Below are positions 40,705-57,753 of a stretch of DNA of 64,000 bases, piece by piece. The DNA comes from Anolis carolinensis (Eukaryota). Below the pieces are notes generated by a model. That model saw only the letters and a list, made by a program, of their open reading frames with translations. It ran no database searches and was not told the DNA's origin. A program made the position numbers and the translations under genes. Location: contig NW_026943826.1 of assembly GCF_035594765.1 (NCBI RefSeq), forward strand, positions 11,583,198-11,647,197. The letters run 5' to 3'. The number at the start of each line of letters is the position of its first letter. Position 1 is the first letter of the stretch.

Positions 40705-43700
40705 ATGCGGCCGAGGTGGCTTCTCCTGGCCGGCCTCTTCTTGGCGGGCAATGAGGCTGCCCACCCAGGCTCCTGCAAGTTGCCCTTCCACCTCCCGGGG
40801 GACTTCCTCCTGGGGGGCTTCTTCCCCATCCACAACAACGGCACCTGCTCCAGGTGAGTCAGCGGACATCTCCCTTCCAGCTTTCCTGTCACCAAGTTTG
40901 GTCCCGAACCGTCATTGGCCAGGTGCAATTCCTCTGTTTGCTGTGCACCATAGGAAAGGGTAGGAAAGGGTTAAGGGAGAGGCAGTGGACAGGGTACCAA
41001 ATTACCAGGGCAACTATCCCAATGCCTTGCCAGTATTTGCTTGGCCATGTTCGGTCTGTGTGCCAAGTTTGGTCCAGATCCGTCACTGGCCGGATGCAAT
41101 TCCTCTGTTTGCTGTCCCACACAGGAAAGGGTAGGAAAGGGTTAAGGGAGAGGCAGTGGACGGGGTCCCAAATTACCAGGGCAACTATCCCAAACCCTTG
41201 CCAGTATTCAGTTGGCCATGTTCGGTCCAGATCCGTCACTGGCCGGGTGCAATTCCTCTGTTTGCTGAGCACCATAGGAAAGGGTTAAGGGAGAGGCAGT
41301 GGACACGGTCCCAAATTACCAGGGCAACTATCCCAAACCCTTGCCAGTATTCAGTCAGCCATGTTCGGTCTGTGTGCCAAGTTCGGTCCAGATCCGTCAT
41401 TGGCTGAGTGCAATTCCTCCTTTAGGAAAGGGTTAAGGGAGAGGCAGTGGACGGGGTCCCAAATTACCAGGGCAACTATCCCAAACCCTTGCCAGTACTC
41501 GCTTGGCCATGTTCGGTCTGTGTGCCAAGTTTGGTCCAGATCCATCATTGGCTGGGTGCAATTCCTCCTTTAGGAAAGGGTTAAGGGAGAGGCGGTGGAC
41601 GGGGTCCCAAATTACCAGGGCAACTATTCCAAAGCCTTGCCAGAATTCAGTCGACCAAGTTCAGTCTGTATGCCAAGTTTGGTCCAGATCCGTCATTGGC
41701 CGGGCGCAATTCCTCTGTTTGCTGTGCACCATAGGAAAGGGTAGGAAAGGGTTAAGGGAGAGGCAGTGGGCAAATCTACACATACAGATTTTCACTTTTA
41801 TTATGTGTATGTATAGATTTTTATGCCATGCTTTGGGGGCACCAGGACGTAAAATGAGTCATGGGGGTCACATGTAAGGAGACACTGACTTGTTATTGTT
41901 ATATGTTATTGTTTACTGATGTATTCTACATTCTTATTGTTTTGTATCTGATATTTCTGTGAGCCGCCCCAAGTCCGCCTCGGGGGAGATGGTGGCGGGA
42001 TACAAATAAACTACTACTACTACTACTACTTCTACTACTTCTATTTCTACTTCTTCTACTTCTACTACTTCTACTTTTTCTTCTACTTCTACTTCTACTA
42101 CTTCTACTTTTTTTTCTACTTCTACTTCTTCTACTTCTACTTTTACTTTTTCTTCTACTTCTACTACTACTTCTTCTACTACTTTTTCTTCTACTTTTAC
42201 TTTTACTTCTTCTTCTTCTACTTCTTCTAGTACTTCTTCTACTTCTACTTTTTTTCTACTTCTACTTCTTCTACTTTTTCTTCTACTTCTACTACTTCTC
42301 CTTGTCTTTCTCCACCCAATTAACGGAGGACCACCTCTGCCCTGTTGTGGCCCAAAGACAAAACTCCCCCCAGCCCTGGCCCTGACGCCTTCTCCCTTCC
42401 GCCGCAGCCTGGACCCCTGGGGCTTCACCCAGTCGCAGGCCATGAGCTTGGCCGTGGAGGAAATCAACCTCTCCTCCCACCTGCTGCCCAATGTCTCCTT
42501 GGGCTACCACATCTGGGACTCCCCCACGGACACCCTCTTCCTCCGGGGGCTCTTCCGGCTGGCTCCCGGTCAACGGGAAAGCCCTCACGGTGCTGCGGAC
42601 TGGGCCCGGAAGGTGTTTGGTGTGGTGGGCCCCTACGAGTCCGTCCTGGCCCCGCTGGCCTCCCACATCCTCAGCCTCTATGGCCTCCCGCAGGTAAGAC
42701 TCTTCCCAGGTGTCTCTGGGATTCGTCAACGAGGTTTTGGCGGTGGTCAGGGGAGCTTTTGCACAATTAAAACGAGCTGTGCCCGTACCATGGGAAGCCA
42801 GACTAGTCCATGCCCTTGTTGCACCTCAAATAGACTACTGCAACGAGCTCTATGTGGGGCTGTCCTTGAAGACTGTTCAGAGGCTTCAAGTAGTCCAGTG
42901 GGTGGCTGTCAGGTTGCTCACCGGAGCGACGTACGACGACATACAACCCCCTTATGTCAGCTCCACCCGCTGCCCCTTTGCTACCAAGCACAATTCAAAG
43001 TGCTGGCCTTGGCCGATAAAGTCCTAAATGGCTCTGAATGTGTGGAACTGCTGGGGAGGCCGTACTCTCAGTCCCACTGCCTTCGTAAACAAGACTGCGG
43101 TGGGACTGAGAGTAGCCTTTTCGGCAACACGGAACCAGCACAATGTAGCACACAAATGACGACCGCCATGGGACTGGGTGCTACATTTTCATATTTATAT
43201 GATATTTACACGTTTTGACTGTTTATTGCATTGATGTTATTGAGGGCTTGCCTCTCCTTCCTCCAGATCAGCTACAGCATCAAGGACGGGAACTTTGACA
43301 ACAGCAGCCAGCAGTCGCTGCTCTTCCGGACGGTGCCCAGCACGGCCCACCAGCTGGACGGCATCGTGGCGCTGGTCCGGGCCTTCCGTTGGGAGTGGGT
43401 CTCGGCCGTGGGCAGCGGCACCAAGGCCACCCAGAAGTCGGTCCGGATCCTCATCGACAGGGCCGCCGCGCAGGGCGTCTGCATCTCCTACCAGGGGCTC
43501 ATGCCCGGCGGGCCGGTCTCCACCTTGTCCCAGTTGCGGAAGGTGGTGGAGAACATCAAGAGGGCCGGGACCAACGTCACCATCGTCCTGGGCAACGACG
43601 CCACTGTCCAGCAGTTCTTCCAGGTGGTGGTCGCGCTGGGGATCACCGGCAAGGTCTGGGTGGCCACCGAGAGCTGGGTCTTGACGGACGCGGTGGCCAC

Positions 43701-45454
43701 GCTGCCGGGCATGGAGCGGGTGGGCACTGTCCTGGGGTTGACCATCAGGCCCATAGAGCTGCCTCACGTCAGGCGCTTCGTAGAGGAGGCGCTTAGTTCC
43801 GGACCCCCCCACGGCTCCTCGTGCCCACAGTCCTGCTTCAAGTGTCCACCACCCTCTCCAGAATCCCTGACCGGCCTCCTGGACTCCACCCTCTGGAACT
43901 GGTCCTTCTACTCCTACGCCGCCGTCTATGCCTTCGCCCATGCTCTCCACCGCAGCCTCGCGTGCAGCCAGGAAGCCTGTCCCTCCAGTCAGGAGCCCCA
44001 GCCGTGGCAGGTGAGCCATGATCCTGGAGAAGACGCTGGCGGTGGTTGCGTCTGGAATGTGTCACCCCTTCCCTCGCTTGTCTCTCCTTCCAGCTTCTTG
44101 AGGCGCTGCACGAGGTGGACTTTCCTCTCCTGAACAACACCATCAAGTTCAGCGGCCAGCAGGACCTTTTCCTGGGCTACGACGTCATGACCTGGGCCTG
44201 GAAGGACGGCGGCGGCGGCGTGGACTACGTGAAGATCGGCAGCTACATGGCCCAGAGCCTGGATATCAACTGGACCCAAATTAGATGGCCGGGTCCTGAA
44301 GGCCAGGTGAGGCTGGAGATGCACCTGTCTCACTTATTCCTTCTTTGGAGGCTTTTAAGCAGAGGCTGGATGGCCATCTGTCAGGGGTGCTTTGAATGCG
44401 ATTTCCTGCTTCTTGGCAGAATGGGGTTGGACTGGATGGCCCATGAGGTCTCTTCCAACTCTACTATTCTATGATTCTATGATTATTCCAACAATTCTGA
44501 CCAATTTGGTGTCCAATCCCTTTGATTCCTGGCTCTTGAGGTTCCTCTTAAGGCATGTTGTCTTCTCCAGGGCTTGTCCCAATGTAAGCTGTCCCGAGTC
44601 CTTCGGGAGATGGAGCGGGATATAAATAAAAATTTATTATTATTATTATTTGAAACACAACAAGATGAGTCCACAGCACACACTCTGCTGGCTGTTGTAC
44701 TGGATCACACGTCGGACACTTCCCAAGATGTTGTTGTTATTATTATTATTGTATGACACAGGAAACAAGATAGATATGCTGGATTTCATATCACAAAATC
44801 ACAAGACGAACACTTCCCAAGTTATTGTTATTATTTGAAACACAACAAGATGAGTCCACAGCAGACACTCTGCTGGCTGTTGTATGGGATCACACGTCGG
44901 ACACTTCCCAAGTTGTTGTTGTTGTTATAATTATTATTGTATGACACAGCAAACAAGATAGATATGCTGGATTTCATATCACAAAATCACAAGACGAACA
45001 CTTCCCAAGTTATTATTATTATTGTTCTTATTCTTATTTGAAACACAACAAGATTAGTCCACAGCAGACACTCTGCTGGCTGTTGTACTGGATCACACAT
45101 CGGACACTTCCCAAGTTATTATTATTATTGTTCTTATTCTTATTTGAAACACAACAAGATTAGTCCACAGCAGACACTCTGCTGGCTGTTGTACTGGATC
45201 ACACATCGGACACTTCCCAAGTTATTATTATTATTGTTCTTATTCTTATTTGAAACACAACAAGATTAGTCCACAGCAGACACTCTGCTGGCTGTTGTAC
45301 TGGATCACACATCGGACACTTCCCAAGTTATTATTATTATTATTTGAAACTCAAGACGAGTCCACAGCAGACACTCTGCTGGCTGTTGTATTGGATCACA
45401 CGTCGGACACTTCCCAAGTGTCTAGGACTGTGTGATGTATCGGCGAATAATGCG

Positions 45455-45525
<71 letters not shown>

Positions 45526-47736
45526 GGAACAAGAGCACCTTCGTATGGTTGGAGTTGAGCATCGCCTCCAGATCTTTGTCTATTGTATGTTATGGTTCAC
45601 TGTGTCGAAAGGCATTGAATGTGTACTCTGTAATCCGCTCTTGAGTCCCGCAGGGAATAGAAATAAAGGGTATTATTATTATTATTATTATTGACACAAC
45701 AACATTGTATGACACAGCAAACAAGATAGATATGCTGGATTTCTTTCACAAAATCACAAGTCGAACACTTCCCAAGTGTCTAGGACTGTGTGATGTATTT
45801 TCAGATGATGCGTGCAGATCTCAGTAGGGTGGCCTTTTGCAGTTGGCAGATCGTAATTTTGTCAATGTCTATTGTTTCCAAATTATTATTATTATTATTA
45901 TTATTATTCTGCTAAGGTGCCCAGCTCCTCCTGCGCCAAGGAGTGTGCCGCCGGTCAAAGCCGGAGCAAGCAACTGTTGGACGAATGCCTGTGCCGCTGC
46001 GACGACTGCGTGGAGGGGACCTACCAGAACCAAACAAGTAAGAGTGGAAGGCGTTGGAACAGAGGCGGGATGGTCATCTGTTGGGAGGGCTTTGGGTGTT
46101 AACAGACTGTGGGCACAGTCTTCGCCCAGCAGGAGGTGGGATGGGAACTGGTGTCTTATATATTCAGAGGGGAAACTATCAGAACTATCTTTTTATGGAT
46201 TGTGGAAAGATGGAATAAACAACGTGTCTGATATATACAGGTTCGAGAGGGGAAACTATTAGAACTATCTTTTTAGGGATTGTGGAAAGATGGAATAAAC
46301 AACGTGTCTGATATATGCAGGTTTGAGAGGGGAAACTATTAGAACTATCTTTTTAGGGATTGTGGGAAAATGGAATAAACAACTTGTCTGATATATAAAG
46401 GTTGGAGAGGGGAAACTATTAGAACTATCTTTTTAGGGATTGTGGAAAGATGGAATAAACAACTTGTCTGATATATGCAGGTTTGAGAGGGGAAACTATT
46501 AGAACTATCTTTTTAGGGATTGTGGGAAAATGGAATAAACAACTTGTCTGATATATACAGGTTGGAGAGGGGAAACTATTAGAACTATCTTTTTAGGGAT
46601 TGTGGAAAGATGGAATAAACAACTTGTCTGATATATACAGGTTGGAGAGGGGAAACTATTAGATCTTTTTAGGGATTGTGGAAAGATGGAATAAATAACT
46701 TGTCTTATTGTCGTGAGCTTGACTGTAACTCCAGAGCCTGACACTGGGATTCCTTCCAATTCTATGATCCTCCGCAGATTCTGATGACTGCCTGCCCTGC
46801 CCCAACGGGACGTGGTCCCCCCCACGTAGCTCCCGCTGCTTTCCTCCATCCGTCACCTTCCTGCGGCTGAGCGACAGCAACGTGGTGGCCTTGCTGGCGG
46901 TGGCCTCGGTGGGCTTCCTGCTGCTGCTGGGTTGCTTGCTGGTCTTTGCTGCCCACCGCCACACCCCTGTGGTGCGTGCCGCCGGCGGGGGGCTGGCCTT
47001 CATCATGCTGGTGGCTCTACTAGCCTCCTGTGCGGCCGCCGTGCTCTTTGTTGGCCAGCCCTCGTCCCGCACCTGCCTCATCCGGCAGCCCATCTTCGCC
47101 CTGTGCTTCACGGCCTGCGTCTCCTGCCTCCTGGTCCGCTCGCTCCAAGTGGTGGTGATCTTCAAGGCGGCCGGGCGGCTGCACCGAGGCCGGCAGTGCT
47201 GGCGCCGCTTCCAGGGCCCCTACCTGGCCGTGGGGCTGAGCTGCGGGGTGCAGGCCACCCTCTGCGCCGCCTGGCTGAGCCTCTCTCCGCCGGCCCTGAT
47301 GCAGCAGGCCTCGGGGCCCCGGGAGGTGTCCCTGCGCTGCTGGGAGGGCCCCTTCCTGGGCCTGGGGGCCGTGCTGGGCTACATCACCCTCCTGGCCGGC
47401 GCCTGCTTCCTCCTGGCCTTCTGGGGCCGACACCTGCCCGAGAACTACTCCGAGGCCCGGCTGCTGACCGCCAGCATGCTGGTCTTTCTCATGGGCTGGG
47501 GCGCCTTCCTCTTCATGTACGCCACCAACGGGAGCCAGCAGACCGCCGCCCTCCAGATGTTCACCGTCCAGACCAGCGTCTACGCCGTGCTCTGCACCTT
47601 CTTCCTCCCCCGCTGCTACGTCATCCTCTTCCGCCCGGAGCGCAACACCGTCGCCCACTTCCGGACCTGCATCCAGGCCTACACCACCACCGCCGCCGAC
47701 CCCGAGACACCACGCCCCGGCACGCAAGGAGTGTGA
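40705..47736 (+). CDS. Type 1 taste receptor (T1R/TAS1R family class C GPCR), non-canonical member, 6 exons, 823 aa, intact
   Basis: Exons 40705-40853, 42408-42693, 43267-44010, 44094-44306, 45917-46037, 46778-47736. Total 2472 nt, phases 2,0,0,0,1, all GT-AG, no stops. Signal peptide, PGDFLLGGFFPIH, QAMSLAVEEIN...LLPNVSLGY, VVGP, PQISY, FRTVPS, FRWEWV, CISY, KVWVATESW, YAAVYAFAHALH, PWQLLEAL, a cysteine-rich domain, and a 7TM with HTPVVRAAGG, CLIRQPIFALCFTACVSCLLVRSLQ, LPENYSEAR, FLPRCYVILFRPERNTVAHFRTCIQAYTT (T1R1/T1R2-type tail). Confidence 0.93.
40885..41817 (-). repeat. ~150-180 bp tandem repeat in T1R intron 1, probably Helitron-derived
   Basis: About 5.5 units (ccaagtttggtccagatccgtcattggc...ttaccagggcaactatcc). 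Ends in ttttattatgtgtatgtataga|t, which resembles a Helitron 5' TC end on the minus strand. Confidence 0.65.
42011..42300. repeat. (CTA/CTT)n pyrimidine-rich low-complexity tract
   Basis: ctactactacttctacttct... for ~290 bp just upstream of T1R exon 2. Confidence 0.85.
42770..43030 (+). mobile_element. L2-clade LINE fragment in T1R intron 2
   Basis: LVHALVAPQIDYCNELYVGLSLKTVQRLQVVQWVAVRLLTG is a degenerate form of the L2 motif LVHALVTSRLDYCNALY.GLP......LQ..QNAAARL.TG. Confidence 0.7.
44651..45880 (-). mobile_element. Cluster of tandemly multiplied Dong/R4 3'-end fragments in (TTA)n tracts, T1R intron 4
   Basis: Repeated gacacagcaaacaagatagatatgctggatt and gaaacacaacaagat..cagacactctgctggctg units separated by TTA microsatellites. 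Same family at ~12615-13070, 21205-21295, 21698-21780, 23446-23635, 32206-32378 and 50416-50558. Confidence 0.75.
46165..46705. repeat. 92 bp tandem repeat, ~6 copies, T1R intron 5
   Basis: gagaggggaaactattagaactatctttttagggattgtggaaagatggaataaacaacttgtctgatata repeated. Confidence 0.85.
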
Positions 47737-48436
47737 GGAGCCTCAAGACCCGCCTTTCGCAATGCCCAGACATTCTCGGGTTGGAAGAGACCCCTAAGGA
47801 CATCCCACTCCATTCTGCCTGGAAGACACCATTCAATCCCTCCCAACAGATGAATAGAATCCTAGGGTTGGGAGAGGCCTCCAAAGGACATCCAGTCCAG
47901 CCCCTTTCTGCCTGGAAGACACCATTCAATCCCTCCCAAGAGATGAATATTGGGATCCTAGGGTTGGGAGAGGCCCCCAAAGGACATGCATTCCAGTCCC
48001 CTTCGGCCAGGCAGGAAGACACCATCCAAGCCCTCCCAACAGATGAATAGAATCCTAGGGTTGGGAGAGGCCTCCAAAGGACATCCAGTCCAGCCCCTTT
48101 CTGCCTAGAAGACACCATTCAATCCCTCCCAACAGATGCATATTGGAATCCTAGGGTTGGGAGAGGCCCCCAAAGGACATCCAGTCCAGCCCCTTTCTGA
48201 CTTGAAGACACCATTCAATCCCTCCCAACAGATGCATATTGGAATCCTAGGGTTGGGAGAGGCCCCCAAAGGACATGCAGTCCAGTCCCCTTCTGCCAGG
48301 CAGGAAGACACCATCCAAGCCCTCCTGACAGATGGCTATTCAGCCACAGATACAATAGGTAGATACACTATATTCTAATATATATATATATATATATATC
48401 ACACACAATAAGTACATACACTATTTTCTATGACAT

Positions 48437-50985: not shown

Positions 50986-51127
50986 GAAGGTGAACAATTC
51001 CCGGGAAGTGGAGGGATGATGTGGGGGGCACACAGCTATGGGGCGCATCATTGGGTCCCAGTGGCTTCAGGGGGACGGAACTGCAATTAGTTCATCTACC
51101 TATCTCTACCTTGGTGGGGGTCTGCCC

Positions 51128-57753
<6,626 letters not shown>

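What the first reader, a model, noticed from the sequence alone, without database searches (positions are those of the whole stretch)
40705..47736. Intact non-canonical T1R taste receptor between ERRFI1 and PARK7: candidate lizard-specific taste modality
Seen: a complete 6-exon, 823-aa class C GPCR with T1R exon architecture (149/286/744/213/121/959 nt), canonical splice sites and no disruptions, despite introns full of transposons. Its signatures (TPVVRAAGG; RPERNT..HF..IQ.YT) are T1R1/T1R2-like. Established: mammalian ERRFI1 and PARK7 are neighbours with no T1R between them. TAS1R1, TAS1R2 and TAS1R3 sit next to NOL9/ZBTB48, PAX7/ALDH4A1 and DVL1/CPTP respectively. Extra T1R lineages (TAS1R4-8) have been reported in non-mammalian vertebrates, and as I recall lizards keep TAS1R4 and TAS1R7. 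Inference: this is none of the three canonical receptors. It is most likely a TAS1R7-type (or undescribed) subunit forming a novel heterodimer with T1R3 or T1R4, i.e. a taste channel lost in mammals.
Basis: partly seen in the sequence, partly recalled or inferred. Interest (0 to 1): 0.9.

Follow-up and report, generated by a model that had tools for sequence, protein, structure and literature searches.

The report
Green anole taste receptor TAS1R7
This is an already published lizard taste-receptor gene (TAS1R7) whose tastant is still unknown; new here are a copy at the same chromosomal spot in the tailed frog and a binding pocket that has lost the usual amino-acid grips, which may explain why it ignored amino acids when tested.

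Summary
The gene is real: six exons, all GT-AG, 823 codons, no stops. It is not new. It is the published Anolis carolinensis T1R7 (Nishihara 2023, PMC10781636). A 2026 preprint cloned it from anole oral tissue, saw it in putative taste buds, and found T1R7 with T1R3 or T1R4 unresponsive to 17 amino acids and sugars, except a small trehalose response with T1R4. It is under purifying selection (dN/dS about 0.17) and is not a moved TAS1R1 (AU p=1e-25). 'Lizard-specific' is wrong: an intact orthologue sits next to PARK7 in the tailed frog (two assemblies). The scan noted the remodelled pocket on this same window before (s1-632837). Verdict: known gene, orphan receptor, modest new leads.

The parts
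40641..40656 (+). Conserved 16-bp upstream element about 50-65 nt before the ATG; candidate cis-regulatory site, function untested
   Evidence: a 12-mer core (up to 2 mismatches) is shared by all six squamate upstream regions and by none of 30 shuffled sets; not found in Ascaphus
40705..40853 (+). TAS1R7 exon 1: likely signal peptide (by eye) and start of the Venus flytrap domain; about 10-13 codons shorter than in other squamates; missing from the RefSeq model P0162
42408..42693 (+). Exon 2 (Venus flytrap lobe 1). Ser128 (42640-42642) keeps the first ligand-binding Ser/Thr. Pro89 (42523-42525) replaces a cysteine found in every non-Anolis sequence covering that column
43267..44010 (+). Exon 3 (Venus flytrap). 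Lys151 (43282-43284) replaces the second ligand-binding Ser/Thr; Thr171 replaces Asp; Lys198-Ala199 (43423-43428) replace x-Tyr; Glu280 is kept; Cys331/335/338 form the T1R2-type loop-3 triplet
   Evidence: roles of the two Ser/Thr and of the loop-3 Cys from PMC5457512; roles of Asp and Tyr from general class C GPCR knowledge
44094..44306 (+). Exon 4 (end of the Venus flytrap domain)
45917..46037 (+). Exon 5 (cysteine-rich domain). The usual CCFxC is shifted to CxCxC (45986-46009), a state shared by squamates and the tailed frog but not the newt
46778..47736 (+). Exon 6 (end of the cysteine-rich domain, seven-helix domain, short tail, stop codon)
33234..34190 (+). ERRFI1 last coding exon (upstream neighbour; start approximate)
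51124..57753 (-). PARK7/DJ-1 (downstream neighbour, tail to tail); the same neighbour in skink, gecko, bearded dragon, wall lizard, brown anole and tailed frog

Best explanation
This is green anole TAS1R7, the ligand-specifying subunit of a class C GPCR taste heterodimer, most likely with T1R4, signalling through PLCB2 and TRPM5 in taste cells. Shown (here or in papers): intact gene, purifying selection, T1R fold, oral expression in putative taste buds, no response to 17 amino acids. Inferred: T1R4 is the partner; and the ligand is not an L-amino acid, because pocket residues that grip amino acids are replaced and two lysines now sit at those positions. My best guess for the ligand is a neutral sugar or a small anion from prey. 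Trehalose, the insect blood sugar, is the only reported lead; organic acids, phosphates and nucleotides come next.
For: Identity with the published Anolis T1R7; exons 2-6 are 100% identical to RefSeq XP_062822029. dN/dS is 0.17 overall (0.25 flytrap, 0.07 exon 6), and the Anolis branches do not differ from the rest (p=0.81). The AlphaFold flytrap model (pLDDT 85) matches T1R structures best (TM up to 0.85). It has the T1R2-type loop-3 cysteine triplet and lacks the T1R3-type loop-2 cysteine, the pattern of a 'specific' subunit. Lys at the medaka T1r2a Ser165 / T1r3 Thr173 position in 16/16 squamates, where 30 other receptors have S, T, A or I; Ala/Ser in place of a Tyr found in 30/30 others. 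Mutating Ser165 abolished or weakened amino-acid responses in medaka. Cloned from oral tissue, seen by in situ hybridisation with PLCB2 and TRPM5 in putative taste buds, small trehalose response of T1R7-T1R4 (preprint 10.64898/2026.08.28.746343). T1R4 partners T1R8 and T1R6 in fish.
Against: No strong ligand is known; the trehalose response is described as small and I could not see the figure. Co-expression of T1R7 and T1R4 in the same cell is not stated in the text I read. A negative cell assay can reflect poor expression. Anolis has lost a conserved flytrap cysteine and has a long branch, so the tested receptor may not represent the clade. Pocket positions come from alignments; I could not inspect side-chain geometry in the model.
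Confidence: 0.6

Rival explanations
1. T1R7 has a flytrap domain that binds no tastant and acts as an accessory, coupling or trafficking subunit for T1R4 or T1R3, as GABA-B2 does for GABA-B1.
For: The canonical binding residues are lost and the tested pairs were nearly silent. The seven-helix exon is far more constrained (dN/dS 0.07) than the flytrap (0.25).
Against: The replacement residue is itself invariant (Lys151 in 16/16; K or R at 198 in 15/16), which suggests selection for a new contact, not decay. The cysteine pattern is that of a specific subunit.
Confidence: 0.17
2. T1R7 senses a non-food or extra-oral cue (skin or faecal secretions, gut metabolites), and taste-bud expression is only part of its role.
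For: No canonical tastant gives a clear response, and the preprint's authors point to extra-oral roles for such 'nonfunctional' T1Rs. The gene sits outside the taste-receptor cluster.
Against: It was cloned from oral tissue and seen in putative taste buds.
Confidence: 0.15
3. The anole copy is decaying: still an open frame, but freed from selection.
For: Anolis branch about twice as long as those of gecko or bearded dragon (0.52 vs 0.26-0.27); lost cysteine, two deletions, very high GC3; crown-Anolis dN/dS of the flytrap is somewhat higher (0.32 vs 0.25, not significant).
Against: Intact in two Anolis species with the same changes; dN/dS 0.17-0.19, not different from background; transcript cloned.
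Confidence: 0.06
4. It is a relocated TAS1R1, as the NCBI name 'taste receptor type 1 member 1' implies.
For: NCBI names for the Anolis and Pogona proteins.
Against: AU test rejects Anolis + T1R1 (p=1e-25). The published tree holds separate Anolis T1R1, T1R2A, T1R3A and T1R4 sequences. Exon-6 identity is about 60-65% to other squamate T1R7 and 34-35% to gecko T1R1 and amphisbaenian T1R3.
Confidence: 0.01

Closest known systems
Anolis carolinensis TAS1R7 / T1R7 (Nishihara et al. 2023, PMC10781636; Liang et al. 2026, 10.64898/2026.08.28.746343)
   Same: The same gene: same start, end and motifs; exons 2-6 identical to RefSeq XP_062822029.
   Different: Two apparent residue differences from the printed sequence (Glu17 vs Gly; one Thr vs Ala in the seven-helix domain), which may be alleles or text-recognition errors. 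The RefSeq model lacks exon 1 and is named TAS1R1.
Salamander TAS1R7 (axolotl; newt P0168)
   Same: Same name and same deep position in the family, outside T1R1/2/5/6 and T1R3/4; one clade with the lizard genes is not rejected (p=0.45).
   Different: The axolotl gene lies beside TAS1R4 in the cluster the paper describes as flanked by DVL1 and MXRA8; the newt protein keeps the Ser, Asp, Tyr and CC motifs and does not group with the tailed-frog gene; published support for lizards + axolotl is only 79%.
[quoted passage not shown]
   Same: Non-canonical T1R4-dependent heterodimers; the model for how T1R7 should work.
   Different: They respond to amino acids; bichir T1R8 keeps the binding Ser and Tyr and lies next to DVL1.
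Mammalian sweet subunit T1R2
   Same: Also replaced the second Ser (by Ile in placental sequences) and the Asp, and binds ligands other than typical L-amino acids; same loop-3 cysteine triplet.
   Different: Separate clade, about 36% identity in exon 6; keeps the Tyr; has no pocket lysines.

Membership tests
T1R (TAS1R) class C GPCR | Flytrap + cysteine-rich + seven-helix domains in a six-exon gene | tested here: met
T1R (TAS1R) class C GPCR | Groups with T1Rs to the exclusion of CaSR/V2R-type receptors; T1R-like fold | tested here: met
   (100 support); exon 6 alone scores about equally to CaSR and T1R2, so the call rests on the trees and the flytrap
TAS1R7 (lizard clade as defined by Nishihara et al.) | Identity with, or clade membership among, the named gecko, bearded dragon and anole T1R7 sequences | tested here: met
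   (100/100)
TAS1R7 (lizards plus salamander) | One clade of true orthologues including the salamander gene | tested here: inconclusive
   Monophyly neither recovered nor rejected (p=0.45); frog + newt rejected; published bootstrap 79
TAS1R1 | Groups inside the T1R1 clade | tested here: not met
   AU p=1e-25
TAS1R2 | Groups inside the T1R2A clade | tested here: not met
   Separated from it by branches at 98-100 support; the AU test for this grouping was skipped for time
TAS1R3 / TAS1R4 (common subunits) | Groups with the T1R3/T1R4 clade; loop-2 cysteine | tested here: not met
   no squamate T1R4 sequence was in my set
Amino-acid-sensing class C receptors | Two Ser/Thr plus Asp and Tyr that grip the alpha-carboxyl and alpha-amino groups | tested here: not met
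   Ser128 kept; Lys151, Thr171 and Ala199 replace the others
Functional taste receptor | Expression in taste cells | not testable with these tools
Functional taste receptor | Heterodimer with T1R3 or T1R4 and ligand-evoked signalling | not testable with these tools
   Preprint: only a small trehalose response with T1R4

The most novel reading that the evidence does not exclude
The PARK7-linked gene of lizards and the tailed frog is a separate, so far unnamed T1R lineage, paralogous to salamander TAS1R7. It left the ancestral cluster before amphibians and amniotes split, and its rebuilt, lysine-bearing pocket detects a class of tastant outside the sugars and amino acids tested so far.
Probability: 0.35. 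Interest if true: 0.65.

Novelty: already known. Interest (0 to 1): 0.3.

Why it matters
The gene, its name, its oral expression and a first ligand screen are already published, so the headline claim adds nothing. What could matter to specialists: T1R7 is still an orphan, and the invariant pocket changes give a concrete reason for the negative amino-acid screen and point to a different ligand panel. The tailed-frog orthologue pushes the PARK7-linked copy back to early tetrapods and questions whether TAS1R7 as named is one gene lineage. The NCBI name (TAS1R1) and the model without exon 1 are wrong and can mislead repertoire counts.

Tried and rejected
My first exon coordinates were off by one or two bases; corrected. 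Relocated TAS1R1: rejected. Pseudogene or relaxed selection: not supported. 'Lizard-specific': rejected. A site count for the paralogy idea was mixed: 15 squamate-typical states are shared only with the frog and 4 only with the newt, but 11 rare states are shared by frog and newt under a looser rule. ERRFI1 was found upstream only in A. sagrei; the other loci held at most 10 kb of flank, so only the PARK7 side is tested there. Three protein searches showed no close orthologue from snakes, monitors, tuatara, turtles, crocodilians, birds, mammals, caecilians or other frogs; these searches are limited by shared words and length, so this is not proof of absence. P0151 had no contig on record; newt and bichir loci came without DNA. 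The careful mixture-model tree did not finish (one search returned the quick tree).
Full report
Observation. All introns are GT-AG, the phases are 2,0,0,0,1, there are no internal stops, and the product is 823 aa. Pfam gives the flytrap (exons 2-3), cysteine-rich (exon 5) and class C seven-helix (exon 6) domains. ERRFI1 lies upstream on the same strand, PARK7 downstream on the opposite strand, and a TNFR-domain frame follows at about 59.7-60.2 kb. For full-length work I used public proteins: P0162 (RefSeq XP_062822029, 100% identical to exons 2-6) and P0299. No N stretch was filled, the anole contig itself was not fetched, and no human contig was fetched.

Identity. Four short motifs from the window each hit one entry in the supplement of Nishihara et al. 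2023 (PMC10781636): Anolis_carolinensis_T1R7, with the same start and end. That paper's tree holds separate anole T1R1, T1R2A, T1R3A and T1R4 sequences, so this is not the only T1R and not a relocated canonical gene. My trees agree: the gene nests among squamate orthologues at 100/100, and forcing it into T1R1 is rejected (p=1e-25). NCBI names it 'taste receptor type 1 member 1' and its model omits exon 1; both are errors.

What is known of its function. Liang et al. 2026 (10.64898/2026.08.28.746343) amplified T1R4 and T1R7 from anole oral tissue and saw all five T1R genes, PLCB2 and TRPM5 in putative tongue taste buds. T1R7 paired with T1R3 or T1R4 did not respond to five sugars, sucralose or 17 amino acids, except a small trehalose response of T1R7-T1R4.

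Selection. A codon model on six squamates (my own script; aligned columns taken exon by exon) gives dN/dS 0.17 overall, 0.25 for the flytrap and 0.07 for exon 6. The Anolis branches (0.17) do not differ from the rest (p=0.81). GC3 is much higher in Anolis (0.82-0.94 in exons 2-6) than in gecko or skink (0.55-0.78), which the model does not allow for. The Anolis lineage is still unusual: a long branch, a shorter exon 1, a deletion in exon 3, and loss of the cysteine of the D-x-C motif that every non-Anolis sequence covering that column keeps. A. sagrei shares these changes.

Distribution and synteny. Orthologues occur in geckos, skinks, a cordylid, lacertids, an amphisbaenian, agamids and anoles. 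PARK7 is the tail-to-tail neighbour in skink, leopard gecko, bearded dragon, wall lizard and brown anole; A. sagrei also shows ERRFI1 upstream. The tailed frog Ascaphus truei has an intact six-exon orthologue next to PARK7 in two assemblies. Nishihara et al. found TAS1R7 only in axolotl and lizards, and I found no paper on the frog gene. The gene is therefore not lizard-specific, and its place by PARK7 is probably as old as the amphibian-amniote split.

Possible hidden paralogy. If the frog, salamander and lizard genes were orthologues, frog and salamander should be sisters. Instead the frog gene joins the squamates at 100/100, and frog + newt (P0168, by eye the clear counterpart of axolotl T1R7) is rejected: p=5e-7 under LG+G4, 7e-5 under a mixture model, 0.036 for the flytrap alone and 0.0004 for the seven-helix domain alone. 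All three together as one clade is neither recovered nor rejected (p=0.45), and the published bootstrap for lizards + axolotl is 79. Axolotl TAS1R7 lies just downstream of TAS1R4, in the cluster the paper describes as flanked by DVL1 and MXRA8. Frog and squamates share the shifted cysteine motif, the lost Tyr and Lys198; the newt keeps the ancestral states. Caveats: one frog and one salamander, long branches, few T1R4/T1R8 sequences, a test named after the first tree was seen, a mixed site count, and the position of PARK7 in salamanders unchecked. I put paralogy at about 0.6-0.65.

The pocket. The predicted flytrap (pLDDT 85) has the T1R fold. In medaka T1r2a, Ser142 and Ser165 (T1r3 Ser150 and Thr173) hold the amino-acid backbone, and changing Ser165 abolishes or weakens the response (PMC5457512). 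By alignment to medaka T1r3, the anole keeps the first (Ser128; variable among squamates) and has Lys151 at the second. Lys is found there in 16 of 16 squamate sequences and in none of 30 other receptors; the frog has Asn, the newt Ser. The Tyr present in 30 of 30 others is Ala or Ser in all squamates and in the frog, and the preceding residue is Lys or Arg in 15 of 16 squamates and the frog. The Asp of R-T-x-P-x-D is Thr in Anolis, and Glu or Asn in other squamates. From general class C GPCR knowledge, that Tyr and Asp contact the alpha-amino group. Inference: the pocket has lost most of its grip on an amino group and gained positive charge, which fits the negative amino-acid screen. Invariant replacements argue for a new ligand over simple decay. 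The loop-3 cysteine triplet and the missing loop-2 cysteine mark it as a T1R1/T1R2-type specific subunit.

Upstream. A 16-bp element at 40641-40656 is shared by all six squamate upstream regions and by none of 30 shuffled sets; octamer-like words lie nearby in several species. Its function is untested.

Verdict. Already known gene; intact, conserved, expressed in the mouth, ligand unknown. It most likely works as the specific subunit of a T1R7/T1R4 taste receptor for a cue other than L-amino acids (0.6). The frog orthologue, the possible paralogy and the pocket signature are modest, testable additions. Interest 0.3.

Noticed in passing
L004:1-30249 (Podarcis lilfordi): At least three tandem copies of the gene, 99.0-99.7% identical including introns; the P. 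muralis locus shows one copy within 10 kb of flank. A very recent duplication in this species or an assembly artefact.
   Followed up: partly
PMC10781636 Supplementary Table 2: Axolotl TAS1R4 and TAS1R7 are listed with identical exon-1 coordinates: a shared first exon or a table error.
   Followed up: no
L005:4529-5653 (Pogona vitticeps): A compact actin-family gene (374 aa in 1125 bp, so intronless) lies just upstream of TAS1R7; not seen in the other loci.
   Followed up: no
window:59748-60227 (+): Frame with a TNFR cysteine-rich repeat (E=6e-6, below cut-off), probably part of TNFRSF9, which neighbours PARK7 in mammals (own knowledge).
   Followed up: partly
window:40870-41780, 44650-45430, 46150-46700, 47780-48400: Tandem repeat arrays of roughly 60-130 bp units in introns 1, 4 and 5 and downstream of the stop; about 42010-42300 is a long CTA/CTT microsatellite (seen by eye).
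   Followed up: no
window:42710-43030: Intron 2 holds a decayed frame resembling the C-terminal part of an L2/CR1-type LINE protein (resemblance from own knowledge).
   Followed up: no
same genome, about 742 kb beyond the window end (note s1-517393): A second T1R, described as TAS1R1-like, between FHAD1 and CTRC.
   Followed up: no
P0326 (Phrynocephalus forsythii): The predicted orthologue is only 480 aa, flytrap domain alone: a split annotation or a truncated gene.
   Followed up: no
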